DNA of 64,000 nt from Octopus sinensis (taxonomy: Eukaryota): contig NW_021831404.1 of assembly GCF_006345805.1 (NCBI RefSeq), positions 1 through 64,000 on the forward strand, in the 5' to 3' direction. The first letter of the stretch is position 1. Each line of letters starts with the position of its first letter. Positions 15,752 through 63,101 of the stretch are shown here, piece after piece. A program made the position numbers and the translations under genes. The notes beneath the pieces were generated by a model. It ran no database searches, had not been told where the DNA came from, and saw nothing but the letters and a program-made list of their open reading frames with translations.

Positions 15752-16516
15752 TACGATGGGCAACTTTCAGTTTCCGTCTACCAAATCCACTCACAAGGCT
15801 TTGGTCGGCCCGAGACTATAGTAGAAGACACTTGCTCAAAGTGCCATGCAGTGGGAGTGAACCCGTAACCATGTGGTTGGACAGAACAAAGCTGTCCGAC
15901 GAATGGGAATGTGAAACTCTGAGTAACAGTTTTTGTGATACTTTTGCTGCTTTTTAATAAAGTATATACACACACACACACACATACCTATGTGTGTGTG
16001 GGTCTTTGTGCCTGTGTTTGTTCCCCCTACAGTTTGTTTATGTCCCTGTAATATAGCACTTCAGCAAAAAAGACAGAATAAAGTGATGCCCCAGTATGGT
16101 TGCAGTAAAAAGATAAAGATATCTCTCATCATAATCCTCAACCTTTTCCCGTCCATTTTCCCATGCTTTCATAGGGTCAGGCAGCGTAATTCATTGAGTC
16201 AGATTTTCTACAACCAGATGCATGCCTGTCATCCACCCCCATCTGTTTCCAAGTAAGGTAATTATTTCCCCCCTTGGCCCACAGAAGAGTGGAAATCAGC
16301 ACCACCACCTGTATGAAGCTGATGCCTGTTTACAACTCGGACAAGCTTAGCAAGATGAACAGACATGAACATGAGCTTTCACATCAGTCACTGGACTGCA
16401 GCCATGCTGGTTCACCACCTTCGAGAGTTTGAGTCAGACAAACCTCTCCTTTCAATAATTGGGATGTAAATAAACCAACATTGGTTGTCTAGCAGTAATA
16501 AGGGACAAATATACAA

Positions 16517-17999: not shown

Positions 18000-18005
18000 T
18001 TTATT
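18000..18005 (-). terminator. Candidate AATAAA polyadenylation signal for ZZEF1
   Basis: First AATAAA I noted on the minus strand, about 245 nt after the stop. The hexamer is common in such AT-rich DNA. Confidence 0.3.
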
Positions 18006-18247
18006 TTCTTATAATTATCTCATATATCAGAAATGCTTGTTCAGGCTACAACCATCAACCACCATGTTAAATCCCAGATTAAAAAAGAATAAGGTTTAAA
18101 AAATATTTTAAACAGATTTCAATATTTTCTCTTTTCTCTTTTCCTGCTATTTTTTGTTACATGACAACCATATTAATCAAAACTTGTTAATTAAATAACC
18201 AATTAATTTGATAATTACAAGCTTTGGATTTCTGGCATTGCACATTT

Positions 18248-18337
18248 TTAACTTGATTTTGATTTTCCCAAAATAGCTTCTAACGCAGAATTCTTCACTC
18301 CAAGAGCAAGTCCAATAGCAGCGATTACACAAGCACC
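18248..18337 (-). CDS. ZZEF1: ZZEF1 terminal coding exon (GACVIAAIGLALGVKNSALEAILGKSKSS*)
   Basis: ttttacag acceptor. IAAIGLAL resembles IAAISLAI. TAA stop at 18250-18248. Confidence 0.9.
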   Translation of the reverse strand, partial: GACVIAAIGLALGVKNSALEAILGKSKSS

Positions 18338-18619
18338 CTGTAAAAATATATAATTAAAAATAATAACAATAATAGTAGTAATCTTTTCTATTATAGGCAC
18401 AAGGCCTGAAATTTGGGGAGAGGGAACTAGTCAATTACATCGACCCCACTTTTTCACTGGTACTTAATTTATCAACCCCGAAAAAATGAAAGGCAATGTC
18501 AACCTCAACGAAATTTGAACTCAGAACATAGCGACAGGCAAAATACCGCTAAGCATTTCACCCAGCATGTTAATGATTCAGCCAGCTCACTGCCTTAACA
18601 ATAATAATATTAATAATAG

Positions 18620-18667
<48 letters not shown>

Positions 18668-19299
18668 CAATGATGATGGTCACTTTTGTCAATTTCGATG
18701 TGTGTGTGTTTGAAAGAAAGGATTAAAAATATAAAAAGTGAGATTAAGAGAGTGATAAAAGGAGTCCTATGGTTTGTTTGCTTTTTTTTATATGTGTATG
18801 TGGGTCTTGTGTAGTTATATTGTTTTCTTTGTTTAATTAAATTATATTTTATTTTTGTTCCCATTTTTATACATGAATATGTCAGCCCCACATTAGCATA
18901 TATATAGAACAGGATTTGAAGAAATTTTATAAACAAACATCAAAGAAACCCTACCTCCATAAAACATGAAGGTTAAAATCCCTCTATATTAATCACATTG
19001 CTTATAGAACAATGAACACCTAAAGAGAAACATATAAACGTACAATCTTTACTCAAATACTTTTGTGAACATCAAAGCACAAGAGAAACCATTTTCTATA
19101 CTAATAAATCCATGACATGCCTGACTAATAACCCCCAACCTTACAAATGAAAACAATAAATACTCCAAATAATAACAAGTAAAGAAATGACTAACTTAAA
19201 CTTACTACATAACTGCATTCTTTTGCATAAAAAAAATAAACACACCCAATTACTAATGGATTAATTACTGGACTTTGTACCTTTGTCAAAGTAAAGGGA

Positions 19300-19771
19300 T
19301 TAACTGTTTTGTTACCAACCCGGCTGAAACTGGCTCTGGCTCTGTAGTACAAATGTCTTGTTCTCATAAGTTTTGAATTAAAATCTTCCACCAAACCTTC
19401 GTCACAATTTATATTCCTAACATTAGCTTGATGATAACTAAATTATTTTACTAAATTCTTTGTTATATTTTAAATTAACTGAAAGAAATACAGAGCATCT
19501 CAACAGAAATATGGTAACAAAAGGGTTAGCAAATGATTAATTTAACCCTTTTGATACCAACCTGGCTGAAACCGCCTCTGGCTCTGTAGTACAAATGTCT
19601 TGTTTTCATAAGTTTTGAATTAAAATCTTCCACCAAACCTTCGTCACAATTTATATTCCTAACAGTAGCTTAATGATAACTATATTTTTTTACTAAATTC
19701 TTTGTTATATTTTAAATTAATTGAAAGAAATACAGAGCATCTCAACAGAAATATGGTAACAAAAGGGTTAA
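19300..19771. mobile_element. Tandem pair of family-1 piggyBac-type MITEs
   Basis: Two roughly 225-bp copies (19304-19526 and 19546-19767) similar to 63447-63666, bounded by TTAA. Confidence 0.8.
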
Positions 19772-20333
19772 CAAATGATAAATTAAAACCCAATATCAAA
19801 AGCAACAAAAATACTGTCACACTGTGCCTGCATAATAAAGGAAGGCCTACACACTTGTTTATAAAGTTCTACATTCATGAACAAATTCTAAACAATAGCA
19901 TAATCCCAAAGTTAATCAATAAAAATTTCTTCAAAACACCTTTCCATAACAACCAACCCTAAAAATATAATTACCACACCACCTAACCCCACACACCCAA
20001 CAGAGACTATATGAAGCCAAGATTAACTCTCATGCATTATAATTCAACAATAGCTTATCTGGCCAAAACTTCAAAGTCACTGTCAACAAGATTCTTGTTT
20101 AAGAATAATAAATTAGGGAGTGTGTGTGTTTGTGGGTGTGTGTGTACACAAGAATGAGTCAGAACGTAATGCAAATAAAAATTGCATTACTTTCTCTCTC
20201 TCTCTCTCTCTCACACACATACACACACAAATACTACACACATAAACAACAAACTCCTACCTAGACATTCCCACATACCCAAACACTCATTGAAATCCCT
20301 TTAGTCTAAAGGATAATCAACTCCCACCATTCT

Positions 20334-20372
<39 letters not shown>

Positions 20373-20473
20373 CGCCCAACCTTTACTATTTACCTGACAC
20401 TCCCCTGCTATCTCTTCCATTTAACATCAAAAGAACAATAATAAAATGGCAAATTCTTTGGGGATAAACTTAC

Positions 20474-20545
20474 ATGAAAGACTTTAGCCAGGATTTCTTT
20501 GGGCTCTTGCAGAGCAAGTAGGTATTCCTCTTTGATGTCCCATTC
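20474..20545 (-). CDS. ZZEF1: ZZEF1 exon 24 (EWDIKEEYLLALQEPKEILAKVFH)
   Basis: YLLAL motif, tctttcag acceptor, gtaagt donor, phase 0-0. Confidence 0.9.
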
Positions 20546-21020
20546 CTGAAAGAAACAAATGGCATTGTTGTTGTTACTGGTGTTGTTGTTAATTTGTTAA
20601 TGTTATTTAACTCCAGGTTAGTCCTGAGGATACTGACCACTCATCAAATACATTCAATCTATGACCAACCTACTGATTTACAAATATATAGAACTACATT
20701 ATTTACTGGTGTTTGACCACCTGATTCTTGAGTGCCCTTAACTGCATTTACTCTGTTGCAGCTTTCTGAACCAGCTGTGTGGTTAAGAAGCTTGCTACCC
20801 ACCCACATAGTTTTCGGTTCAGTCCTACAGCATAGCAGCTTGGGCAAGTGTCTTCTACTACAGCTTGGGGCAAACAAATGAGTGTCTCATCAAACAAGCA
20901 GTGACCCTTTGTTTCCAGTTTCTGTGAAAACATATCTGGCCACAGGGAAATACAACCTTGCTCGGAAATAGTTATGGGTTGGTGACATACCCATATTTAT
21001 TATTTTGCACATTACTTAAC

Positions 21021-21180
21021 CCTAAGATTTTCAGTATGTAAGAAGAGTTCGGTGAGAGCTCTTTGAATCGGTAGAGGTTGCTGGTTTGGTTGCTGGGATG
21101 TAGTTCGGCTGAGGGATACATACAGCTTCCAGAGTGGACGGAGAAGTGTCAAGTTGATCAAACTCTTGTTTTCTGGATGC
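21021..21180 (-). CDS. ZZEF1: Duplicated exon 23b (...SLSRTT...TENLR); candidate mutually exclusive alternative exon, or a pseudo-exon
   Basis: About 185-bp copy of 22635-22819 with 3 substitutions and the same acceptor. The native donor is absent, but AGG/gttaag gives phase 0. Confidence 0.5.
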
Positions 21181-22263
21181 CTGAAAGTAAGGGCCATCAT
21201 TATCAAAAAAACCTTGCTTGGAAATAGTTATGGGTTGGTAACAGGAAAGGTACGTGGCTGTAGAAAACCTGCCACCCACAAAGAGTGCCATCCATCCATC
21301 CATACATGTATGCATACACATGGACACACACGCACATTTTTTGTCCAACCCATGCCAACAAAAAATACAGAGGCTAAATACCCTGTCCTGTATGTGCTAC
21401 ATGACCGATTAATTATATCTTATAGAGATAAAAATAGTACATCATTATCGTCATCGTCAATGCTTCATCCATTTTTCCATGTTTCCATGGGGCAGAGTTT
21501 CTACAGACGGATGCCCTTTCTGTTGCCAACCCTCACCTATTTCCAAGCAAGGTAATATTTCCCTATGGCCAGACATGTCTTTTTCATGAAAGACTGGAAA
21601 CAAACAACACTGGTTGCTTGTTTTCAATCATCACATGTCAAGACAAGGATACAAAAAAAAAAACACTCACACACACAGATATATATATATATATTTCAGT
21701 ATAATTATAATAAGGGTGTTAGCATAGAGGCGCTGTCATTTCAACACCCTTATTATAATTTTATAATTATACTGAAATATAAATTAACCGTTATGGTCTT
21801 GTTAGTACGCTGGCCACTGATAAATCATTAAATAATGACTTTATCCTAATTATATATATATATATAATAATAATAATAATATATATTATAATAATAATGA
21901 TAATAATAATAATATAATAATAATAATAATATGAGGGAATATTATTCCAATCTTACAGGGAAAAATTAAATTTAGAAATACTAAATCAAATTTCACAAAA
22001 TATAATATATATATATATATAAATTAGAAAAAAAAACACCTTTTATCAGTTCAATAATGAAAAAATTAAATTATACCTTTTAGAAAAAATACATCTTATA
22101 GAAAGATTAAATATAAGGTAAAACATATAACAATGATTAAGTAATGTGCAAAATAATATATAAAATGTATATATAATATATACGTTTTTTCTAAAAAGTA
22201 TAATTTAATTTTTTCATTATTGAATTGATAAAAGGTGTTTTTTTTCTAATTTATATATATATA

Positions 22264-22610
22264 TGGGATGAGGTGGTGAAGCATGACCTTCGAACATTAG
22301 GCCTCACAGAGGCAATGACAAAAGACCAAGACCTCTGAAGGTATGTTGTGACTGAGAAGACCCGGCAAATAAAGTGAGTCCACAACTATAACCTACACCA
22401 GTGTCACATAACCAGCCCACTCAAGAGTACCTTGGATCATATGGCAAAGTGCTGTGCTTGAGGAGACCTATTGAGTCAAGTACATCAACATCAGCAATAT
22501 CAAAATCAAATCAAAATGGAAATTGTAGTTGTGAGCCCCATGCCAGTAACACGTAAAAAGCAGCATCCAAACGTGGCCAGTGCTGCTTTGACTAGCTTCC
22601 ATGCTAAAAG
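22264..22610 (+). mobile_element. Degenerate RTE-type LINE 3' fragment
   Basis: WDEVVKHDLRTLGLTEAMTKD..L*RY.VTEKTRQIK*, followed by 3' UTR sequence shared with other copies in the window. Confidence 0.7.
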
Positions 22611-22628
22611 AATGAAGACAATACAAAC

Positions 22629-22791
22629 CACTGCAAGATTTTCAGTATGTAAGAAGAGTTCAGTGAGAGCTCTTTGAATCGGTAGAGGTTGCTGGTTTGG
22701 TTGCTGGGATGTAGTTTGGCTGAGTGATACATACAGCTTCCAGAGTGGACGGAGAAGTGTCAAGTTGATCAAACTCTTGTTTTCTGGATGC
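22629..22791 (-). CDS. ZZEF1: ZZEF1 exon 23a, ancestral copy (HPENKSLINLTLLRPLWKLYVSLSQTT...RALTELFLHTENLAV)
   Basis: LLRPLW and RALTELF..TEN motifs. actttcag acceptor, GTG/gtttgt donor, phase 2-0. Confidence 0.9.
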
Positions 22792-22959
22792 CTGAAAGTA
22801 AGGGCCATCATTATCAAAATTAATTTATTCAATGTTCACCACACACACACACATGCGTGCACATACAAATATGCACATCTGTCAACTGTAAAGAAAATAT
22901 GAAAAACCAAAGGAAAATGCAAAAAAATTAAATTGCTACAAGAGAAAGTAAAGACGTAC

Positions 22960-23076
22960 TCTAATTGAATATGGAGTATTCTCAGGAGTAGGAAGATGGT
23001 GTTTAATCGTTTCACATGAGTTTGCTTACAAGCAACATGGACCAGGTGTGCCCAGATGTCTTTAATAGGTAAATAT
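22960..23076 (-). CDS. ZZEF1: ZZEF1 exon 22 (YLPIKDIWAHLVHVACKQTHVKRLNTIFLLLRILHIQL)
   Basis: Resembles LPLAKIWEWLVGVACRQTGHQRLKAIHLLLRI. ttctgcag acceptor, gtacgt donor, phase 2-2. Confidence 0.93.
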
Positions 23077-24402
23077 CTGCAGAAGGAAAAAATAAACTTA
23101 AAACAGTCGAGAAAACAACTACAACATTAAAAACAACATCAACAACAATACAATATTACCATATTTTATGTCATATAAAATGGACATTTTTTCAAAAAAA
23201 AATGCCCCAGAAAAATCATCCTGGGTCCAATATGCAAAGCTGGGCCTCCAATAAGCAAATTTTGTCCCTTGCTCACTACTTAAAGCTAATTTAAATCCAG
23301 ATGATCTTTTCTACATAGCTTGACTCCGTAATAATATATAAACATTATTATTCTTACTTTTACTGCAAAAAAAATTATAACAATGGACTACTAGGATGCT
23401 TTAAAATATATGCTTTAATGCATTAAGGTTTTAAGGTTTTTTACCTTTTTCCTGAATATACACTGCTGATATTGAGGTACATCTAATACGCTTGTGTCTT
23501 TTATGCCGACCACCAACACCTCTTATGTCCATCTCCGATGTTCCTGCCTTTAGGTTTTCACTTCATCATACAACCCAGCACAATTTGATTTGTTCTCAGT
23601 CGAAAGACACCTGTTGTTATATGCTTGTTGTTTGTATTTGTAATTGTGTACCATGTTCTCCATTTTTTGTCTTTGTTGTTGTACACATTCGCTAGCTTAC
23701 TTACAAAAAAATCTAATGCTCTTAACTTAGGCTTTTTTGGGTAGTGGGGGGGGACAACCACATCAAACTCTCTCAAGTCTAACTGTCCAAAACAATAAGG
23801 ACTTCCGGTAACTTGACTGAAGAAAGAAGACCACGAATGACCCATCTTCATCGTTTAACGTCAGTTTTCCATGCTAGAATGGGTTGGATGGTTCAACTGG
23901 GGTCTGGGAAGCCAGTAGGCTGCGCCAGGCCCAGTCTGATCTGGCAGTGATTCTAGAGCTGGATGCCGTTCCTAACGCCAAAAAAGAGCGTGTGAGACAG
24001 CGCCAGTGGTTTCAAGGTAGGAAGAATTCAAGTAGAGTTCAGATTAACAAAGTAACCACACGTCTAAGCCCACAAAAGGATAAAAAGGCAAAGTTGGCCT
24101 CAGTGGGGTTTGAACTCAGAGCAAGGAGACAGGGAATAGACACAAATACAGCAATACAAAACACTCTATTCAATATGCTATATTTGAGGGCCGTTGCCCC
24201 TTCTTCAGCACTCATCTAACAACAGTGTTAAGTTATTGGATATACCAATTCACATATTAGACACATTCCTGGGGCTGGTATGTAAACATTAAAGATTAAA
24301 GAAGTAGCAAGTACCTACAGATCTTTCATTATTACTATTATTATTCAGCAATTGATGCAGACACATAATATATAGCAGACACATATGTACATACATATGT
24401 CA

Positions 24403-28999: not shown

Positions 29000-29860
29000 G
29001 TTAAACAGGTTATCAAAAGGTGACAACTACAAGGAGTCAGGCCACCATGACCACCACCAAAAACTGCCATCCCTCCACCCACACTATTTATGTTGGGAGA
29101 AGTGATGACTGAGATTGCAACCATGACCATCACCATCAACAACCACATACACACGTTAGCTACATGGTACCAAAGGAGACTACAAACATTGCATGTCAGT
29201 CAACCATGACCACCACCAACTACTCCACACATATGCACTCACATGCTATTTATAGGTTATCAAAAGTGACCACTAAGGTTAGATGTTGCCTGTCCACAAC
29301 CATCACCACCACCATCAACTACTGCCTAGACACTACTCACATGTTACCAAAAGCGATAGTAAGGTTGGAAGATGCTAGTCCTCAATGACCACCACCAACT
29401 ACTACCCAAACACTACTGGCACTCCATCAGTTATAACAAGTGCTCCAGTTGATCAGATCAACACAACAGCCTGCTAATAAAATTAATGTTCAAATGGCTG
29501 AGTACTCCATAGATATGCACACCTTTAATATAGTTCTGAGATAGTTTCAGCATAAATCAGAATGTGACGGATCTGAGCCCTTTGAATTACAGGTAGTACT
29601 CATTTTTGCCAGCTGAGTGGATTGGAGCAATGTGAAATAAAGTGTCTTGCTCAAGAACGCAATGCCCTACCAGGAATTGAACTCATGACCTTACAATGGC
29701 AAGCCAAACACCCTAACCACTAAGCCACGTTCCTTCAAACACTACTTACATGTTATCAAATGTGACAGTGAGGTAAGACGTAAACCTGTCCCGGACCACC
29801 ACATCATCAATTACAACCCAAACGCTACTTACATGTTGTCAAATGTGACAGTAAGGTAGG
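29000..29860. repeat. Degenerate 83-95 bp minisatellite derived from the exon 19 3' end and donor, split by a SINE
   Basis: 29737-29779 is about 88 percent identical to 29820-29862. Older units lie near 29005, 29150, 29237 and 29331. Confidence 0.75.
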
Positions 29861-30029
29861 AAGCCCCTGGAACATGTATCTTCTCCTCCTCTTTTGTGTT
29901 GTTGTCGTAGTTGTGTTTTGACTCGCGGCAGATTACGACATCATTGTCTTCTTCCAAGAATTGGCAGGCCATCAGTGCCACTTCAGGTAACAAGGCCAGA
30001 TCACAACGCTTCGTGCCATTCTCGATGGC
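29833..30029 (-). CDS. ZZEF1: ZZEF1 exon 19 (AIENGTKRCDLALLPEVALMACQFLEE...RESKHNYDNNTKEEEKIHVPGASYLTVTFDN)
   Basis: Strong match to ACQFMEE...RESKHPYNNNTNFEDKVHIPGA. acaacag acceptor, gtaagt donor, phase 0-2. Missed by the ORF track because it has no start codon. Confidence 0.95.
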
Positions 30030-39552: not shown

Positions 39553-41723
39553 CTGCAACAGAAAACAAGAATTTACTATTATTTTTAGGTTAGTTTATTT
39601 TTTGTTGTTTTTTTCTAACCCTTTTCTCACCATATTTCTGGTGAAATACCTTGCATTTATTTCAATAAATTTTGAAAATAATGAAAATTTCAGCAAAATA
39701 ACATTGTCATTATAATGTGGGGTGTTTGGAACATAATTTAAAACGAAATTTTCATGGAAGGTTTTAATTTAAATCGCTTTAAAATATGAAATTTATATTA
39801 TAAATCCAGGGTGATTTCAGGCAGGCTGGTATCAAAAGGGTTAAAACTCACATCATCATTATCATCGTTTAACATCTTCTTTCCATGCTGGCATGGGTTG
39901 GACGGTTTGATATGGAACTGACAAGTTGGAAGCAGTCCAGACCCCAATTGTCTGTTGTGACATGGTTTCTATGGCTGGATGCCTTTCCTAATGCAAACTA
40001 CCTAACAGAGTGTGCTAGATACTTTTTACGTGCCACCGACACAGGTGTGTTCATACAGCACCTGCACAGGTGCGCTTATGCAGCAGCAGCACAGGTGCTT
40101 TTTATGTGGCACTAGCATCTGAACGGACAAGCTTGTATGTATGGAAGACAGTGGTTTTGCTTATCAAGTACAGCAACATCATCATCATTTAACGCCCATC
40201 TTCCATGCTGGTATGGGATGGACAGGTTGACAGGAGCCAGCAAACCAGAGAGCTGCACCAAGCTTCAATTATCTGCTTTGGCATGGTTTCTACGGTTGGA
40301 AGCCCTTCCTAATGCCAACCACTTTATAAAGTGTACTGGATACTTTAATTTACTTTGGTAATTAGAGATGCAACTTTACTTTTAGGGATTTCATTTGCCT
40401 TTGTCTCTTCTTATAAAGGGCAACTATACTTTTACTTTTCAAGCTAAGTAAAAGCATAGTTGCCCTTACATGCAGTCTAGTCCCTTACAACCCTCTTTAG
40501 CTGAGCATCCCTAATCTTGCGAGCTCATAAATGCTGGTGCCATATAAAACATACCTCTACTGATGCTCTGTAAAAGCACCCAGTACACTCTGTAAAGTGG
40601 TTGGCATTAGGAAGGGCAACCAGCCAATGGAAACCATGCCAAAACAGACAGAGCCTGAATAGCCCTTCAGCTGGTCAGCTCATGTCAAACCATCTAACCT
40701 AAGCCAGCATGGAAAATAGACGTTAGATGGTGATGATGATGGTTTATGTGTCTGAACATGGAAAATTCCTTCCAAAGGCATACCACCATCATCATCATTT
40801 TAAAGTCCATTTTTTGATGTTTGCATGGATCAGACAGTTTATTGAAGCAGATTTTCTGAAGTCGGGTACCATTCTTGTTGCCAACCCTCACCCGTTTCCA
40901 AGCAAGGTAAAATTTTTACAAGGCTGGACATGTTTCGCATGGAAGATAGGAAACAAGGGATAACGCTTGCATGATGGCGATATTCCAACTCTCAAATAAT
41001 GCCAAAACAAGTGGACACAAACACTCACATACATACATATAGGAAGGGCATCCTACCGTAGAAACCATGCCACAACAGACAATTGAAGTCGGGTCAGCTC
41101 TTATCAAACTGCCCAACCCATGCCAGCATGGAAAACGGACATTAAACGATGATGATGATATATTTAAGTGACACTCAGTAGGTTACGATGACACGAGTTT
41201 CAGTTGATCCGATTGATGGAACAGCCTGCTTTTGAAATTAACATGCAAGTGGCTGAGCACTCCACAGACATGTATACCCTTAATGTAGTTCTCAGAGAGA
41301 TTCAACATGGCACAGAAATGTGACAAGGCTGGCTCTTTGAAATTCAGGTACAACTCATTTTTACCAGCTGAGCAATGTAAAATAAAGTGTCTTGCTCAAG
41401 GGCATAATGCACTACCAGGAATTGAACTCATGACATTTACAATCATGAGCTGAATACCCTAACCACTGAGTCACACAATGTTGCTTCTTTCAGTTTCCAT
41501 CAACTAAATCCACTCACAAGGGTTGGGTTAGGTTGGCCTAGGGCTATACAAGAAGACTCCTGCCCAAGGTTTCATGTAGAGGGACTGAAATGTGAAACCA
41601 TGTAGTTATGAAGCAAAACCCTTAACCACGTAGTTATGCCTGCGCCTGGGGAAAGATGGAAGAAAATCATAGAAAATGTAAAGAAAACATAAAAAAAAAA
41701 ACACACAACAAAAGACAACTTAC

Positions 41724-44839: not shown

Positions 44840-44878
<39 letters not shown>

Positions 44879-44882
<4 letters not shown>

Positions 44883-45790
44883 GCCCTGATGCAGTACCAG
44901 GCAGTGGCTCTCATGGCTTCTGATCTTAACTGATTGGAAGTGTTATCATGTACATTGTTTTGTCTTGGTATAAAAGATGGGCTACAGCAAATATTCTGCT
45001 TAATACCACAGATTTGCTTGTCAGTTGTTTGACCTTAACCAGTTGAGCATGTCCCTTAGTGGCTGACGATATGTGCATCTCTGATCACGAGCAGAAGTAG
45101 TGGGGGAGCATCATAGCCATGTGTTGAGAGGGATTCTTTGGGATTTGAATAATTCACCTCTGGAAACATGGGTGGTTCTTTCAACATCCTTAAACAACCC
45201 TTATTCAGGGACCTTTTGAGCGAGATGGGCTACTCAACCTGAAGAAAATTCTAACTGGGCCCCACCTGCAAGGTCATGCGCTGTTTATCTTGATATGAGA
45301 TCACCATGTCGCGCACATATGGTTGTGATGCATGTGCCTGGTGTACCCTTATCAGACGGGTAGTCATGATGGGTATATTGGGCTTCGTATATTTTACCCC
45401 AGTGTCACTTTGATGGCATGAACTGCTCTCTCACTCAATAATAATAATAATAATAGGGAGCATCATAGCCATGTGTTGAGAGGGATTCTTTGGGGTTTGA
45501 ATAATTCACCTCTGGAAACATGGGTGGTTCTTTCAACATCCTTAAACAACCCTTATTCAGGGACCTTTTGAGCGGGATGGGCTACTCAACCTGAAGAAAA
45601 TTCTAACTGGGCCCCACCTGCAAGATCATGCACTGGTTATCTTGATATGAGGTCACCATGTCGTGCACATGTTGTGATGTACGTGCCTGGTGTACCCTTA
45701 TCAGACAGGTAGTCATGATGGGTATACTGGGCTTTGTATATTTTACCCCAGTGTCACTTTGATGGCATGCACTGCTCTCTCACCCAATGA
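44879..45790. repeat. About 560-bp interspersed repeat plus a partial tandem duplicate; class unknown
   Basis: 45456-45790 repeats 45100-45440. An inverted full copy lies at about 62160-62715 and a fragment at 11825-11885. Bounded by (AAT)n. Confidence 0.85.
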
Positions 45791-46338
45791 TAATCCTTTC
45801 TACTAAAGGCATAAGGCCTGAAATTTTGGGGGAGCGGGCTAGTCGATTACACTGACCCCAGCACTCCACTGGTACTTATTTTATTGACCCAGAAAGGATG
45901 AAAGGCAAAGTAAACCTTGGTGGAATTTGAACTCAGAATGTATCAATGGGCATAATATTGCTAAGCATTTCATCCAGCATGCTAACAATTCTGCCAGCTC
46001 ACCATCTTTAATAATAATAATAATAATTCATCATTCACCATCTTTCCAAGCTGACATGGGTTGTAAGGATTAGACAGGAGCTGTCTAGGCAGAAGACTAC
46101 ACCAGGCTAATAATCATTATTATTAAATCTGTGTTTGTTTTGATATCAAAATTGAAGAAATTGGCTTTGTTTGTAAAACATTTTAGAGCTGGGTTTTGCA
46201 CCCTCTAAGCAAGTTTCGTTCTTGCACTTCTGGGTCAAGTGCAACCAAAGCAAGTACAGATGTAAACAGATGTTAAATGACAATAAAAGATGGTAATGAT
46301 AATAATAATAATAATAGTGATGATATGTGCACACTTAC

Positions 46339-54480: not shown

Positions 54481-55386
54481 TAATACTTTAGTGTACTAAC
54501 ACCCCCACCCCTCACCTCCAGAGCAATGAAAGGCAATGTGGTTTATATGATGGGAAATATAATTTCAAAATTTTCATGGTGGACAGAGTGAGGATCTGAT
54601 CAAAAGACTTTGCAATTAAAAGAAGTGGGAGAAAAGTGGAAATATACAAAAATAAACATTATTTTCCGTTTTACTGTTAGTTTTGTTTCATTTTGAAAAA
54701 TGAAAAATACACGGTTTATTATTGTTCATAATTTAAATTACATAACAGGGACACCAAAATCTTTTAAGTGCTTAGGGCTTCAATGGGTCTTAATCCAGCC
54801 CTGTGTGTTTGTGTGTGTCTATATATATATATATATTTATACATATACACACATACATACATGTGGAGACGCAATGGCCCAGTGGTTAGGGCAGCAGACT
54901 CGCGGTCGTAGGATCATGGTTTCGATTCCCAGACCGGGCGTTGTGAGTGTTTATTGAGCGAAAACACTTAAAGCTCCACGAGGCTCCGGCAGTAGATGGT
55001 GCTGATCCCTGCTGTACTCTATCGCCGCAACTTTCATTCACTCTTTCTTCTGTTGGCCTGCTCGCTTAGCCAGCGGGGTGGCGTCATTTGAAGGCTAAAA
55101 CAATGCAAAGCGCATTGTGACCAGCGATGTGTAGCAACATCTGATAGCCTGGTCGGTCACAGTGATCACGGTGATATACATACATACATACATACACACA
55201 TTTAAATGGCGTCATTTAAAGGCTAAAACAATGCAAAGCACATTGTGACCAGCGATGTGTAGCAACATCTGATAGCCTGGTCGGTCACAGTGATCACGGT
55301 GATATACATACATACATACACACACAATGGGCGTCTTTCAGTTTCCATCCACCAAATCTATAGTAGAAGATACCCGAGGTGCATAC

Positions 55387-55514: not shown

Positions 55515-57099
55515 CTGAAACAACAACAACAAAACATAAATAACATGGTGGAAATATTGAATGGCTAGACTTGTCTAATCATCATCATCATCGTTTAGCA
55601 TCCGCTTTCCATGTTAGCAATGGTTGGACGGTTCAACTGGGGTCTGGGAAGCCAGAAGGCTGCACCAGGCCCAGTCTGATCTGGCAGTGTTTCTACGGCT
55701 GGATGCCCTTCCTAACGCCAACCACTCCGTGAGTGTAGTGGGTGCTTTTTACGTGCCACCGGCACAGGTGCCAGACGAGGCTGGCAAACGGCCACAATCG
55801 GATGGTGCTTTTTATGTGCCACCGGCACGTGTGAATGAAAGTGAGGGAAGCGAAGAGCATAAGATCTGTAACTTGAGACTGGTCATGCATATATATTTAG
55901 CTTCACATGTATAACATATGGGTGCACGTGTGTTATAGGTAACTGTGCCACATACAAAGCACCCTTGCCAGTGCTATGTGCAAAGCACCTGTGGCAGTTT
56001 CACAAATAAGGCACATATGCCAGTGCCACATATAAAGTACCCATGGCAGTGTCACATAAAAAGCACCCGGTTCACTGTAATGCAGTTGGTGCTAGGAAAG
56101 GCATCCATCCAACCATAGCAACCATGCCAAAACAGGCAATAAGAGACAGGGTAACTCTGCAGCTGGCTGGCACCTGTCACACTGTCCAGCCCATGCCAGC
56201 ATGGAAAATGGTCGTTAAATGATAATGACAATGATGATGATGTGCGTGAGCATATGTATGTGTAGAATGGGGTGTATGTTTGAGTGTATAAACAATGCTT
56301 ACTATTCTTATTTAGTAAAATAACTTAGCTAGTGTTAGGAACATAAATTGTGACTAAGGTTTGGTGGAAGATTTTAATTCAAAACTTATGAAAACAAAAC
56401 ATTTGTACTCAAAGCCAGAGCCAGTTTCAGCCGGGTTGGTAACGAAAGGGTTAATGTTCTCTTTTCCATGTTTGAATGCATCGGAAAGAGTTTGTTGAGG
56501 CAGGTTTTCTAAGGCCAGATACCTTTCTTGTTGCCAATCCTCAGCCATTTCCAAACAAAGTAATATTTCTCCATGCCTGAACATGGTCTCGAAGAGTATT
56601 CGAAACATCAATCAAGTGATGTCAAAACAAGTACACACACATACACACACACACAATAGACTTCTTTCAGTTTGTCTACCAAATCCGCTCAGAAGATATT
56701 GGACAGCCCAGGACAATAGTAGAAGACACCCAAGGTGGCATGTAGTGAGACTGAACCTGAAACCATGAGGTTAGAAGGCAAATTTCTTAACCACACAGCC
56801 ATGCTCATAATTATAATCAAAAATACCAAAGCTATGATCATCTCATCATTTTGTTAAGGATAGCATGTGTCCTCATCTGTTTTAAGCCATTAGGATGTAA
56901 TTTGAAGAAATTTTTTACATGCTATTTTTTCCATGACTGCATACAAGTATCTATAGAGAAAATAAAGTTCATGTTGATTGGGACTTCAAATTTCACCTAT
57001 CAGTTCAGTCAACCAGTGAAGAAAGCTTCAATTTCTCACATCTGTAAAAGAAAAGCAATAGGATGGTGGGGTAGGCAATTAGATAAGGTATATACTCAC

Positions 57100-59308: not shown

Positions 59309-59373
<65 letters not shown>

Positions 59374-59464
59374 ATATTATTAGAGGCAAAACCACTATTT
59401 TGCAAAACAAACAAAGAAAGACTTAATCAATACATAAAATTTTAATAAAAAGTCAAAAAAACCG

Positions 59465-59507
59465 CCACTACAATTGTTTCTTGTCCTGATCGACAATCTT
59501 CAGGTGG
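59465..59507 (-). ncRNA. Intact minimal hammerhead ribozyme motif, mirror copy, sense to the ZZEF1 pre-mRNA
   Basis: Exact reverse complement of 59555-59597. Confidence 0.8.
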
Positions 59508-59554
59508 ACTTCCAATAAGTCAGTTTCAAATTATGAAACTGACTTATTGGAAGT

Positions 59555-59597
59555 CCACCTGAAGATTGTCGATCAGGACAAGAAACAATTGTAGTGG
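59555..59597 (+). ncRNA. Intact minimal hammerhead ribozyme motif
   Basis: ccac-CTGAAGA-ttgtc gatcag gacaa-GAAAC-aatt-GTA-gtgg. Palindromic ACAATTGT at stem III. Confidence 0.8.
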
Positions 59598-59771
59598 CGG
59601 TTTTTTTGACTTTTTATTAAAATTTTATGTATTGATTAAGTCTTTCTTTGTTTTGCAAAATAGTGGTTTTGTCTCTAATAATATTATATAATATTTTACA
59701 ATAAAATTGGATTTAATCCTAAATCTGATTTTTTCCCTGTAAATTTGGATTTATTCCCTAATATTTATTAT

Positions 59772-60285: not shown

Positions 60286-60535
60286 TGGGTAAGAGCATAA
60301 AAAGTGTACCTCTCTGCCAAGCCAGTGCTGAGCGAGTGTGGCAGAGTAGGTTCATCAAATCAGTATGATCTCAAGCTGAAATTCATGGCCTCCACATCAG
60401 AACATGGTTGGTTGGAGAGAACATATGAGGTCTTCATCCTGCAGTGGACTAAACATGGGCAATCCAATCCAGTTCATCACTTCAAACAGAAATAAATATG
60501 AAAATATAAGGGTGAAAAAAGCAGATAGAACTTAC

Positions 60536-60646
60536 GGTGAAGGAACCTGTCCAAGCTTGTAACATCCGAAACAGACATGGTAGCTGCATTCAGCACATTG
60601 AACTCTGGTCCCCATAATATAACCGTTACAAACATCACAGTGATAA
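60536..60646 (-). CDS. ZZEF1: ZZEF1 exon 2; second ZZ zinc finger (YHCDVCNGYIMGTRVQCAECSYHVCFGCYKLGQVPS)
   Basis: tttacag acceptor, gtaag donor, CxxC..CxxC..CxxC pattern, phase 2-2. Confidence 0.92.
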
Positions 60647-60719
60647 CTGTAAATTGAGTAAATATAAAATAAAAGAAAAGAGAATCAGTCTTAAATAAAG
60701 TCATTACCATGATCATCAT

Positions 60720-61885: not shown

Positions 61886-63101
61886 CTGGGAAAAAGAAAA
61901 GCCACATTAATTCCTTAACATTTAAATGGGCCAAATTTAGCCTAAATATTCTACCTGCTTTACATTCAAACTGGTACGATCCAGCCTCTTGCGCCTAGCC
62001 TGTGATGTCATTCTAAAGATAAAGAATCACATTACTGAAATCTAAAACCTACAAGATAATATATGATTAATTCAAAACAATGTGAATAAAAATAAGTATC
62101 GTTTGACAGAGTAATCCGAAAGCTAAAGGCTTGAGTCAAATATGATATCATTATTATTATTGAGTGAGAGAGCAGTGCATGCCATCAAAGTGACACTGAG
62201 GTAAAATATACGAAGCCCACTATACCCATCATGACTACCCACCTGATAAGGGTACACTAGGCACATGCATCACAACCATATGTGCGCGACATGGTGATCT
62301 CATATCAAGATAAACAGCGCATGACCTTGCAGGTGGGGCCCAGTTAGAATTTTCTTCTGGTCGAGTAACCCATCCCACTGAAAAGGTCCCTGAATAAGGG
62401 TTGTTTAAGGATGTTGAAAAAACCACCCATATTTCCAAAGGTGAATTATTCAAACCCCAAAGAATCCATCTCAACACATGGCTATGATTCTCCCCCACTA
62501 CTTCTGCTCTTGATCAAAGATGCACATATTGTCAGCCACTAAGGGACATGCTCAATTGGTTACGGTCAAACAACTGACAAGCAAATCTGTGGTATTAAGC
62601 AGAATATTTGCTGTAGCCCATCTTTTATACCAAGACAAAACAATGTACATAATAACACTTCAATACAAGATAAGAAGCCATGAGAGCCACTGTCTGGTAC
62701 TGCATCAGGGCATTCATTATTATTATTATTATTGTTATTATTATTATTATTACTGGGCCTCATGGAGGCAATGTGGGCAATGCTAGTGGCATGTATAAAG
62801 CACCTTTCAAGCAGTGGGCTTCACAGAGTCAATGACAAATGACCGAGACCTTCAGGCATTGTCATGCTTGAGAAGAAGACCCAACAAGACAAGTGAAATC
62901 ATAGTCATGGCAGAAACTGGTGGCACGCAACTGGCACCCATGCCAGTCGCAAGTAAAAGCACCCACTCTGAGTGGTTGGTATTAGGAAGGGCATCCAGCC
63001 ATAGAAACCATGCCAAATCAGACGGGCGTCAGTTATAGCCCCTCAGCTTACCAGCCCAGGTCAAACCAACCAACCCATCCAGCATGGACAACAGACGTTA
63101 A

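What the first reader, a model, noticed from the sequence alone, without database searches (positions are those of the whole stretch)
21021..22791. Recent ZZEF1 exon duplication that can only be used mutually exclusively
Seen: about 185 bp covering the acceptor and most of exon 23a (22635-22819) are copied 1.6 kb downstream in transcript direction (21024-21208). There are only three substitutions: two synonymous (TCA>TCC, ACT>ACC) and one CAA>CGA (Gln>Arg). The native donor was not copied, but the flanking sequence supplies AGG/gttaag in phase 0, giving ...TENLR in place of ...TENLAV. Both exons are phase 2-0, so including both shifts the frame. Inference: this is a nascent mutually exclusive exon pair or a decoy exon. 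The Q>R change is what A-to-I editing of CAA would produce, which may be coincidence.
Basis: partly seen in the sequence, partly recalled or inferred. Interest (0 to 1): 0.7.

Follow-up and report, generated by a model that had tools for sequence, protein, structure and literature searches.

The report
Partial ZZEF1 exon copy inside an intronic repeat
A 222-base patchwork, mostly a copy of the third-from-last coding exon of ZZEF1, was pasted into a repeat element in the next intron by a DNA repair or replication accident, giving an exon look-alike that is more likely silent or harmful when spliced than a new alternative exon.

Summary
Bases 21024-21208 copy 22635-22819 (185 nt, 3 mismatches), and the codon changes, phases and AGG|GTTAAG donor are as described. 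The gene is ZZEF1, on the minus strand.

The copy is not a tandem exon duplication. It is a 222-nt composite insertion with two local templates: 185 nt of acceptor plus exon in direct orientation, and 26 nt copied in inverted orientation from the loop of a palindrome 1.1 kb away. Short fillers join the pieces. The insertion sits in an older dispersed repeat and is flanked by a 34-bp duplication of the target. That points to DNA-level template switching or end-joining.

The frame arithmetic holds, since only one of the two exons keeps the frame. Nothing here shows that 23b is used:
- A 23b-only protein would lose an alanine invariant in 15 of 15 ZZEF1 sequences and shorten a segment of invariant length.
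- A second donor 30 nt downstream brings in a stop codon.
- Including 23a and 23b together gives a premature stop 82 nt before the last junction.
- The predicted pre-mRNA fold loops 23b out.

Most likely this is a young, neutral or mildly poisonous pseudo-exon. No transcript data could be reached.

The parts
22960..23076 (-). It ends AGA|GTACGT and leaves 2 nt of a codon.
   Evidence: tblastn of P0001 residues 709-746 maps to 23078-22965.
22629..22791 (-). Exon 23a, 163 nt, the native third-from-last coding exon (...RALTELFLHTENLAV). Its donor is GTG|GTTTGT.
   Evidence: The spliced homologue P0001 reads ...AEDLAV|KW at the same point.
22635..22819 (-). Template A: 28 nt of intron (a yUnAy branch-point candidate read by eye at -23, pyrimidine tract, AG) plus the first 157 nt of exon 23a.
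22009..22264 (.). Near-perfect AT-rich palindrome (MITE-like), with arms of about 95 nt. Its loop holds template B.
   Evidence: I1: 61-nt arms, 97% complementary. DNA hairpin -68.2 kcal/mol, z = -16.4.
22137..22162 (+). Template B: 26 nt copied in inverted orientation into the insertion.
   Evidence: 25 of 26 identical, with a 22-nt exact run. It is the only other copy in the window (E about 3e-7 to 3e-6, depending on query length).
21491..21604 (+). Another copy of the dispersed repeat, in the opposite orientation to the one that received the insertion. It is complementary to both flanks of 23b.
   Evidence: (I2, I3).
21210..21243 (-). Upstream copy of the 34-bp duplicated target (TGTTACCAACCCATAACTATTTCCAAGCAAGGTT).
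   Evidence: (D4), 7, 42: 32 of 34 identical to 20954-20987.
20988..21209 (-). The 222-nt insertion, read 5' to 3' on the minus strand: t (21209), piece A (21208..21024), aggg (21023..21020), piece B (21019..20994), tgggta (20993..20988).
21021..21180 (-). Candidate exon 23b, short form, 160 nt. The donor AGG|GTTAAGTAAT is created at the filler/piece-B junction. Used alone, it is in frame (...TENLR|EWD).
20991..21180 (-). Candidate exon 23b, long form, 190 nt. The donor TGG|GTATGT is created at the filler/target-duplication junction. It contains an in-frame TAA (...TENLRVK*).
20954..20987 (-). Downstream copy of the 34-bp duplicated target.
20860..20953 (-). Continuation of the host repeat element beyond the insertion. 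It is contiguous with 21210-21290 once the insertion and one duplicate are removed.
   Evidence: the reconstructed empty site aligns without a break to four other copies of the element.
20474..20545 (-). Penultimate coding exon (EWDIKEEYLLALQEPKEILAKVFH), 72 nt, phase 0 at both ends.
18248..18337 (-). Coding part of the last exon (GACVIAAIGLALGVKNSALEAILGKSKSS, then TAA).

Best explanation
A single, fairly recent DNA-level accident inserted a 222-nt patchwork into an older dispersed repeat, in the intron between the third-from-last and penultimate coding exons of ZZEF1. A broken or stalled 3' end left the repeat at 20987. It then copied 26 nt from the loop of a nearby palindrome (22137-22162, opposite strand) and 185 nt from the acceptor and body of exon 23a (22635-22819, same strand). 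It re-entered the repeat 34 nt behind the point where it had left, which duplicated those 34 bp. Fillers of 1, 4 and 6 nt mark the three joints.

This is replicative template switching (FoSTeS/MMBIR-like), or polymerase-theta-type or NHEJ repair with templated patches. It is not tandem exon duplication and not retroposition.

The product is an exon look-alike. It carries the native 3' splice site and exonic sequence, plus two accidental donors that were both created at joints of the patchwork. It most likely evolves neutrally and is mostly skipped. When it is spliced in, the expected result is usually a premature stop and NMD, either because 23a and 23b are both included or because the GTATGT donor is used. 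A 23b-only mRNA is possible on paper but would encode a protein that breaks an invariant feature of ZZEF1.

Shown: the anatomy, the direction of copying (23a to 23b), the frames and the conservation. Inferred: the repair pathway, the splicing behaviour and NMD.
For: Anatomy:
- The 185-nt direct copy has 3 mismatches.
- The 26-nt inverted copy of 22137-22162 matches at 25 of 26 and is the only other occurrence in the window.
- A 34-bp direct repeat flanks the insertion, 32 of 34 identical.
- With the insertion and one duplicate removed, the flanks align without a break to four other copies of the same dispersed element. The repeat therefore pre-existed and 23b is the derived copy.
- There is no poly(A), 28 nt of intron are included, and one piece is inverted.
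- The source of B lies in the loop of a roughly 255-nt palindrome with DNA hairpin z = -16.

Gene identity: Pfam ZZ at 60535-60684. Homologues are named ZZEF1 in Lingula, Ptychodera and Branchiostoma, and the exon map runs to the stop codon.

Consequences of splicing:
- 23a plus 23b gives a PTC 82 nt before the last exon junction. The long 23b form gives TAA 93 nt before it.
- All 11 mapped donors of this gene have G at +5. GTTAAG does not, and matches the canonical register at only 4 of 11 positions. GTATGT is used twice elsewhere in the gene.
- The Ala of ...LAV is invariant in 15 of 15 sequences, and the spacing from TELF to Y is 15 residues in every homologue. 23b gives 14 residues and no Ala.
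- The MFE fold pairs the inverted repeat copy with the downstream flank and loops out 23b (z = -11.8).
- The substitution pattern (2 synonymous, 1 non-synonymous) is compatible with neutrality (P = 0.13-0.14).
Against: - No transcript, read-level or cross-species data for this locus could be reached. Searches found no same-species sequence, so non-use is inferred and not shown.
- The short donor is less hopeless than its consensus match suggests. /GUUAAGUA fits the published +1 shifted U1 register (/GUNAAGUA type; PMC4856993). Its U1 duplex energy (-7.3 kcal/mol) is as good as that of the native 23a donor (-6.4).
- 23b inherits the full 3' splice site and all exonic enhancers of a constitutive exon, so appreciable inclusion is plausible.
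- The joints carry fillers rather than microhomology. That fits end-joining better than classical MMBIR, so the exact repair pathway is open.
- Two synonymous against one non-synonymous change is also what weak purifying selection would give.
Confidence: 0.68

Rival explanations
1. Nascent mutually exclusive exon pair. 23a and 23b are both used, one per mRNA, and double or zero inclusion is removed by NMD. This would give a ZZEF1 isoform with Q>R and ...TENLR.
For: Lengths are similar (163 and 160 nt), phases are the same and the acceptor is identical. Only single inclusion keeps the frame. The short donor can pair with U1 in the shifted register (PMC4856993). The ORF is intact, and 2 of the 3 changes are synonymous.
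Against: - The isoform would delete a residue from an invariant-length segment and lose an invariant Ala.
- Nothing favours skipping of the constitutive 23a.
- The intron between 23a and 23b is 1448 nt, so there is no steric exclusion.
- Both copies of the complementary repeat flank 23b rather than being shared out one per exon.
- A competing donor brings in a stop codon.
- The substitution statistics are not significant.
- The copy arose as an accidental patchwork whose donor was created at a junction.
Confidence: 0.08
2. Poison or decoy exon with a real effect. 23b is recognised at an appreciable rate because it carries a constitutive acceptor and enhancers. This lowers ZZEF1 output through NMD or by stalling removal of this intron. 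The effect could be slightly deleterious or could have been co-opted for regulation.
For: The 3' splice site is identical and includes a yUnAy branch-point candidate read by eye at -23. There are two usable donors. Every inclusion pattern other than 23b-short alone gives a PTC more than 50 nt upstream of the last junction.
Against: The predicted long stem loops the pseudo-exon out. There are no expression data. A young insertion with about 2% divergence has had little time to acquire a regulatory role. For a constitutively needed gene, strong poison-exon use would be selected against.
Confidence: 0.18
3. RNA-mediated origin: a LINE reverse transcriptase copied unspliced ZZEF1 pre-mRNA (or an antisense transcript), switched templates, and integrated with a target-site duplication. 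The G at the Q/R site could then be a fossil of an edited inosine.
For: A flanking target duplication exists. On the plus strand the insert ends in a short A run, CAAAAA, next to the duplication. One of the three differences is A>G on the sense strand.
Against: - There is no poly(A) or LINE 3' tail. Four of the five A's are templated by the source.
- The two pieces have opposite orientation, in an order that does not fit twin priming.
- 34 bp is long for a LINE target duplication.
- The other two differences are A>C and T>C, so they are not editing-type changes on the sense strand.
- There is no significant RNA structure at the site.
Confidence: 0.05
4. Assembly or sequencing artefact, such as a chimeric read or collapsed haplotype that created a false insertion.
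For: It rests on a single assembly, and no reads are available.
Against: The copies differ at 3 of 185, 1 of 26 and 2 of 34 positions. The structure has a clean target duplication inside a repeat whose other copies are contiguous. Artefactual duplications are normally identical and lack target duplications.
Confidence: 0.03

Closest known systems
Tandem exon duplication giving mutually exclusive exons (Kondrashov & Koonin 2001; Ivanov & Pervouchine 2018, PMC6071210), with exclusivity enforced by frame and NMD as in FGFR2 IIIb/IIIc (reference 11 in PMC6071210)
   Same: The exon copy is homologous, sits in the adjacent intron, has the same phases and a similar length, and double inclusion shifts the frame. 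A duplicated sequence (the 34-bp target) competes for one complementary site, which loosely recalls the docking/selector model.
   Different: Only part of the exon was copied, with 28 nt of intron and no donor. It was copied as a patchwork insertion and not as a tandem block. Both competing sequences flank the new exon instead of one lying beside each exon. No evidence of use was found, and the variant protein breaks an invariant feature.
Complex templated insertions from replicative template switching (FoSTeS/MMBIR) or polymerase-theta/NHEJ repair, as seen at germline structural-variant breakpoints (Malhotra et al. 2013, PMC3638133)
   Same: Short segments were copied from templates within 2 kb, in both direct and inverted orientation, and joined in series at one site. 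The entry site is duplicated.
   Different: The joints show 1-6 nt fillers rather than clear microhomology. Here the insertion happens to carry a complete 3' splice site and most of a coding exon.
Poison exons and pseudo-exons (cassettes with a premature stop, coupled to NMD)
   Same: Inclusion is predicted to give a stop more than 50 nt upstream of the last exon junction.
   Different: Classical poison exons are conserved and regulated. This one is young, accidental and untested.
5' splice sites recognised by U1 in the +1 shifted register (Roca & Krainer 2009; Tan et al. 2016, PMC4856993)
   Same: /GUUAAGUA has the /GUNAAGUA pattern. Its predicted U1 duplex is -7.3 kcal/mol, against -6.5 predicted for the published shifted example.
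   Different: This is only a sequence resemblance. It was not tested, and use of this register by cephalopod U1 is assumed from the conserved U1 5' end.

Membership tests
Mutually exclusive exon pair | Two homologous neighbouring exons of equal or similar length and the same phases | tested here: met
   163 and 160 nt, both entering in phase 2 and leaving in phase 0, with 154 of 157 shared nt identical.
Mutually exclusive exon pair | Both exons have functional splice sites | tested here: inconclusive
   The acceptor is identical over 28 nt. The donor AGG|GTTAAG matches the canonical register at 4 of 11 positions but has a shifted-register duplex of -7.3 kcal/mol. A rival donor, GTATGT, lies 30 nt downstream.
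Mutually exclusive exon pair | Mature mRNAs contain exactly one of the two exons, and each is seen in transcripts | not testable with these tools
   No same-species transcripts or proteins were found in the searchable collections.
Mutually exclusive exon pair | A mechanism of exclusivity: steric hindrance, U2/U12 incompatibility, competing RNA structures, or frame/NMD | tested here: inconclusive
   Only frame/NMD applies. The intron between the exons is 1448 nt, so there is no steric hindrance. The competing complementary copies both flank 23b, and the MFE fold loops it out.
Mutually exclusive exon pair | Both variants are compatible with the protein family's conserved features | tested here: not met
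   23b removes an Ala invariant in 15 of 15 sequences and shortens an invariant 15-residue spacer to 14.
Templated insertion by template switching (FoSTeS/MMBIR type) | Inserted DNA is copied from nearby genomic templates | tested here: met
   Template A lies 1.6 kb away and template B 1.1 kb away, and each is the only other copy in the window.
Templated insertion by template switching (FoSTeS/MMBIR type) | Several templates joined in series, in mixed orientation | tested here: met
   A is direct and B is inverted.
Templated insertion by template switching (FoSTeS/MMBIR type) | Microhomology at the switch points | tested here: not met
   The joints carry fillers (t, aggg, tgggta) and no clear microhomology. 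This favours an end-joining or polymerase-theta-like variant.
LINE-mediated retrocopy | 3' poly(A) or LINE tail, spliced template, short target-site duplication at an endonuclease motif | tested here: not met
   There is no tail, intron sequence is included, one piece is inverted and the duplication is 34 bp.
ZZEF1 gene | ZZ-type zinc finger, and a C-terminal region homologous to ZZEF1 of other animals | tested here: met
   Pfam ZZ scores 22.9 bits against a cut-off of 21.4. Hits named ZZEF1 have E values of 1e-84 to 1e-70, and the best hit has 1e-177. Exons map in order down to the stop codon. The EF-hand part lies outside the window.
A-to-I recoding site | Adenosine lies within a double-stranded RNA structure, and a G is seen in cDNA but not in DNA | tested here: inconclusive
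   The local 301-nt fold is no more stable than shuffled sequence (z = +0.67). No inverted copy of the exon exists in the window. cDNA could not be tested.

The most novel reading that the evidence does not exclude
The patchwork insertion has created a working alternative exon. In some tissues 23a is skipped and 23b is spliced through its shifted-register donor, giving a lineage-specific ZZEF1 C-terminal isoform (Q>R, LAV>R). That would be a mutually exclusive exon pair caught within a few percent of divergence from its birth. It would have been made by local template switching rather than tandem duplication, with its exclusivity policed only by frame and NMD.
Probability: 0.08. Interest if true: 0.6.

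Novelty: new member of a known kind. Interest (0 to 1): 0.3.

Why it matters
Most mutually exclusive exons are ancient, so the first step of their origin is rarely visible. This locus shows one concrete route. A small, messy repair event can drop a complete 3' splice site and most of a coding exon into the next intron, and the joints of the patchwork can supply donor sites by accident. The locus also shows why most such births should fail: the donor is wrong, a stop codon comes in, and a conserved residue is lost. If transcript data showed real use, this would be an unusually young example. If not, it is a useful annotated pseudo-exon that gene predictors and splice-aware aligners could mistake for an alternative exon.

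Tried and rejected
1. Same-species transcripts or proteins that would show the junctions. The 117-aa peptide of exons 22-23a-24 gave no hit. The 499-aa multi-exon query gave only distant ZZEF1 proteins, the best at 62% identity, and all hits were 866 aa or shorter, so full-length cephalopod ZZEF1 does not seem to be reachable. One scan of metagenome contigs with a 25-nt exon word shared by both copies found nothing. The run accession of the best hit (SRR30931882) is not mentioned in the held literature, so the species of that relative and of the window stay unknown.

2. Pfam and PDB sequence searches on the C-terminal exons found nothing beyond the ZZ finger.

3. Transposon capture was considered and rejected. 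The insert has no terminal inverted repeats, and the 34-bp duplication fits no DNA-transposon family.

4. L1-type twin priming was rejected because the order and orientation of the two pieces do not fit and there is no A tail.

5. Rfam and tRNA scans of 18000-24000 were run to classify the host repeat or find an intronic RNA gene. The only result was a sub-threshold mir-466 match on a TG/CA microsatellite.

6. dN/dS-type and exon versus non-exon divergence tests have too few substitutions to say anything.

7. I first judged the GTTAAG donor as clearly inferior. The free-register U1 duplex calculation and the published shifted register made me soften that.
Full report
**Observation.** On the minus strand, 21208..21024 repeats 22819..22635: 185 nt with three mismatches. 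blastn E is about 1e-87 to 1e-90, and this is the most similar repeat pair of 100 nt or more in the window. The copy starts 28 nt upstream of the acceptor of an exon at 22791..22629 and stops 6 nt before that exon's donor (GTG|GTTTGT). After the copy comes AGG|GTTAAG, so a 160-nt exon 21180..21021 would read ...TENLR in place of ...TENLAV.

**Gene.** The reading frame across 23076..22960, 22791..22629, 20545..20474 and 18337..18248 is open and ends in TAA. An upstream ORF at 60684..60535 is a ZZ-type zinc finger (Pfam PF00569, 22.9 bits against a cut-off of 21.4). A 499-aa concatenate of candidate exons finds proteins named ZZEF1 from Lingula, Ptychodera and Branchiostoma (E 1e-84 to 1e-70). 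It also finds an unnamed 856-aa protein, P0001, at 62% identity (E 1e-177), encoded on a 2.8-kb Logan contig that is evidently a spliced transcript (no intron interrupts the ORF). tblastn of these proteins lays the exons out in order along the minus strand, from about 51 kb to the stop codon at 18.2 kb. The gene is therefore ZZEF1, and the duplicated exon is the third-from-last coding exon. P0001 reads ...AEDLAV|KWG..., which supports the LAV end of exon 23a. The number '23' and the word 'octopod' could not be checked. No same-species sequence is in the searchable collections, and every ZZEF1 hit is 866 aa or shorter.

**What the copy really is.** The 185 nt are only part of a 222-nt insertion. 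Read on the minus strand it runs: a 34-nt sequence TGTTACCAACCCATAACTATTTCCAAGCAAGGTT (21243..21210); one extra t; piece A (185 nt); aggg; 26 nt (21019..20994); tgggta; and then the same 34 nt again (20987..20954, 32 of 34 identical).
- The 26 nt equal the plus strand of 22137-22162 at 25 of 26 positions, with a 22-nt exact run. That is an inverted copy of a sequence that occurs nowhere else in the window.
- Both flanks belong to a dispersed repeat. When the insertion and one of the two 34-mers are removed in silico, the joined flanks align without interruption to four other copies of that repeat, at 21450-21650, 40800-41000, 56450-56640 and 16150-16330.
- The repeat was therefore there first, and the patchwork landed in it with a 34-bp target duplication. 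This settles the direction of copying as 23a to 23b.

**How it arose (inferred).** Two templates lie 1.1 and 1.6 kb from the target, one direct and one inverted, and they are joined in series. Together with the duplicated entry site, this is the signature of a wandering 3' end. Read on the plus strand, synthesis leaves the repeat at 20987, copies 22162>22137 from the opposite strand, then copies 22635>22819, and re-enters the repeat at 20954.
- This is FoSTeS/MMBIR-like template switching, or end-joining with templated patches. Such small templated insertions are known at germline breakpoints (PMC3638133).
- The joints carry 1-6 nt fillers and no clear microhomology, so a polymerase-theta or NHEJ flavour is as likely as classical MMBIR.
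- Template B sits in the loop of a roughly 255-nt AT-rich palindrome (61-nt core arms 97% complementary; DNA hairpin -68 kcal/mol, z = -16). A structure of this kind can stall forks and expose single-stranded DNA. This link is speculation.
- Retroposition is unlikely. There is no poly(A) or LINE tail, intron sequence is present, and the order and orientation of the pieces do not fit twin priming.
- An assembly artefact is unlikely, because all three duplicated parts have diverged (3/185, 1/26 and 2/34) and the target duplication is clean.

**Splicing consequences.**
- Frames: 23a alone gives the canonical protein. 23b-short alone is in frame (...TENLR|EWD...). 23a plus 23b gives a stop inside 23b, 82 nt before the last exon junction. 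Skipping both shifts the frame.
- Acceptor: 23b inherits the whole 3' splice site, including a yUnAy branch-point candidate that I read by eye at -23.
- Donors, both accidents of the patchwork: AGG|GTTAAG lies at the aggg/piece-B joint, and TGG|GTATGT, 30 nt further on, lies at the tgggta/target joint. The second would extend the exon to 20991 and bring in TAA (...TENLRVK*), 93 nt before the last junction.
- All 11 mapped donors of this gene have G at +5, and GTATGT is used twice. GTTAAG matches the canonical U1 register at only 4 of 11 positions. However, /GUUAAGUA fits the published +1 shifted register (PMC4856993; PMC9311317). Its free-register U1 duplex (-7.3 kcal/mol) is no worse than that of the native 23a donor (-6.4) or the GTATGT site (-6.5). 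Donor choice therefore cannot be predicted.
- The 731-nt pre-mRNA segment folds far better than shuffles (z = -11.8). In that fold the opposite-orientation repeat copy at about 21520-21620 pairs with the flank downstream of 23b, which loops the pseudo-exon out. This would favour skipping, but it is an inference.

**Would a 23b isoform make sense?** In an alignment of 14 ZZEF1 homologues, the stretch from RALTELF to the next conserved Tyr has no indel: the spacer is 15 residues in every sequence. The alanine of LAV is invariant in 15 of 15 sequences, counting the window. 23b gives a 14-residue spacer and replaces Ala-Val by Arg. The Gln/Arg site lies in a loop of variable length and sequence, and is Lys in P0001. 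Two synonymous changes against one non-synonymous change is not distinguishable from neutrality (P = 0.13-0.14), and exon and non-exon parts of the duplication have diverged alike (P = 0.67).

**Editing idea.** One A>G among three differences is what any transition would give. The other two differences are A>C and T>C. The local fold around exon 23a is no more stable than shuffled sequence (z = +0.67), and no inverted copy of the exon exists in the window. There is no support for the idea, and it cannot be tested without cDNA.

**Comparison with known systems.** In its frame logic the locus resembles a young tandem-duplicated mutually exclusive pair policed by NMD (PMC6071210 and references there). 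It fails one membership test, compatibility with conserved protein features. It has no exclusivity mechanism beyond frame, and transcripts could not be examined. It is best filed as a templated-insertion pseudo-exon, with poison-exon potential.

**Verdict.** The origin is re-explained as a composite templated insertion into a repeat with a 34-bp target duplication. The 'mutually exclusive exon' reading is possible on paper but unsupported, and I put its probability at about 0.08. A real poison or decoy effect gets about 0.18. A mostly silent, neutral pseudo-exon is the most likely case. Interest is modest (0.3): it is a clean, datable snapshot of how exon look-alikes are born, but it belongs to known kinds.

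Noticed in passing
window 29736-29778 and 29819-29861 (minus strand): This is a second partial exon copy in the same gene. The last 27 nt of the exon ending at 29833, its donor CAT|GTAAGT and about 13 nt of intron are repeated 83 nt downstream in the intron, at 90.7% identity. Use of the downstream donor would read through ATG TAA, so it looks like a dead decoy donor. It hints that small local duplications are common in this genome.
   Followed up: partly
window 22009-22264: This is a near-perfect AT-rich palindrome, MITE-like and bordered by TA microsatellite. Its DNA hairpin is -68 kcal/mol with z = -16. The loop supplied the 26-nt inverted piece of the insertion.
   Followed up: partly
window 19300-19541 and 19542-19783: This is a 242-nt tandem duplication (about 94% identity) in the intron between the penultimate and last coding exons. 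Part of it also matches 56327-56454 at 91%.
   Followed up: no
window 55079-55198 and 55207-55326: This 120-nt local direct duplication, 97.5% identical and 128 nt apart, is the only other repeat in the window as young as the exon copy.
   Followed up: no
window 59363-59694: This is a roughly 332-nt self-complementary palindrome (95.5%) in an upstream ZZEF1 intron.
   Followed up: no
window 44843-45452 and 62146-62751; 45104-45445 and 45456-45794: These are large repeat copies (610 nt at 94%, inverted; 342 nt at 95%, tandem) within ZZEF1 introns. Inverted pairs of this size could form long double-stranded RNA in the pre-mRNA.
   Followed up: no
window 60535-60684 (minus strand): This exon encodes a ZZ-type zinc finger (YHCDVCNGYIMGTRVQCAECSYHVCFGCY; Pfam ZZ above its cut-off). 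The window therefore spans ZZEF1 from a ZZ finger to the stop codon.
   Followed up: yes
window 39347 region (minus strand): A possible donor, GAG|GTTAGA, sits at the end of the exon at 39547-39347. It is another GTT-type donor in this gene. The exact boundary was not resolved, because P0001 continues ...KDLEVLLLL.
   Followed up: no
window 20125-20235 (plus strand): This is a weak Rfam mir-466 match (28.5 bits against a gathering score of 85) on a TG/CA microsatellite, almost certainly a chance match.
   Followed up: yes
protein search results: Every ZZEF1 hit returned was 866 aa or shorter, although ZZEF1 is about 3000 aa (size from my own knowledge). The 117-aa query missed P0001 even though they share long exact words. 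Negative results from this search should not be read as absence.
   Followed up: no
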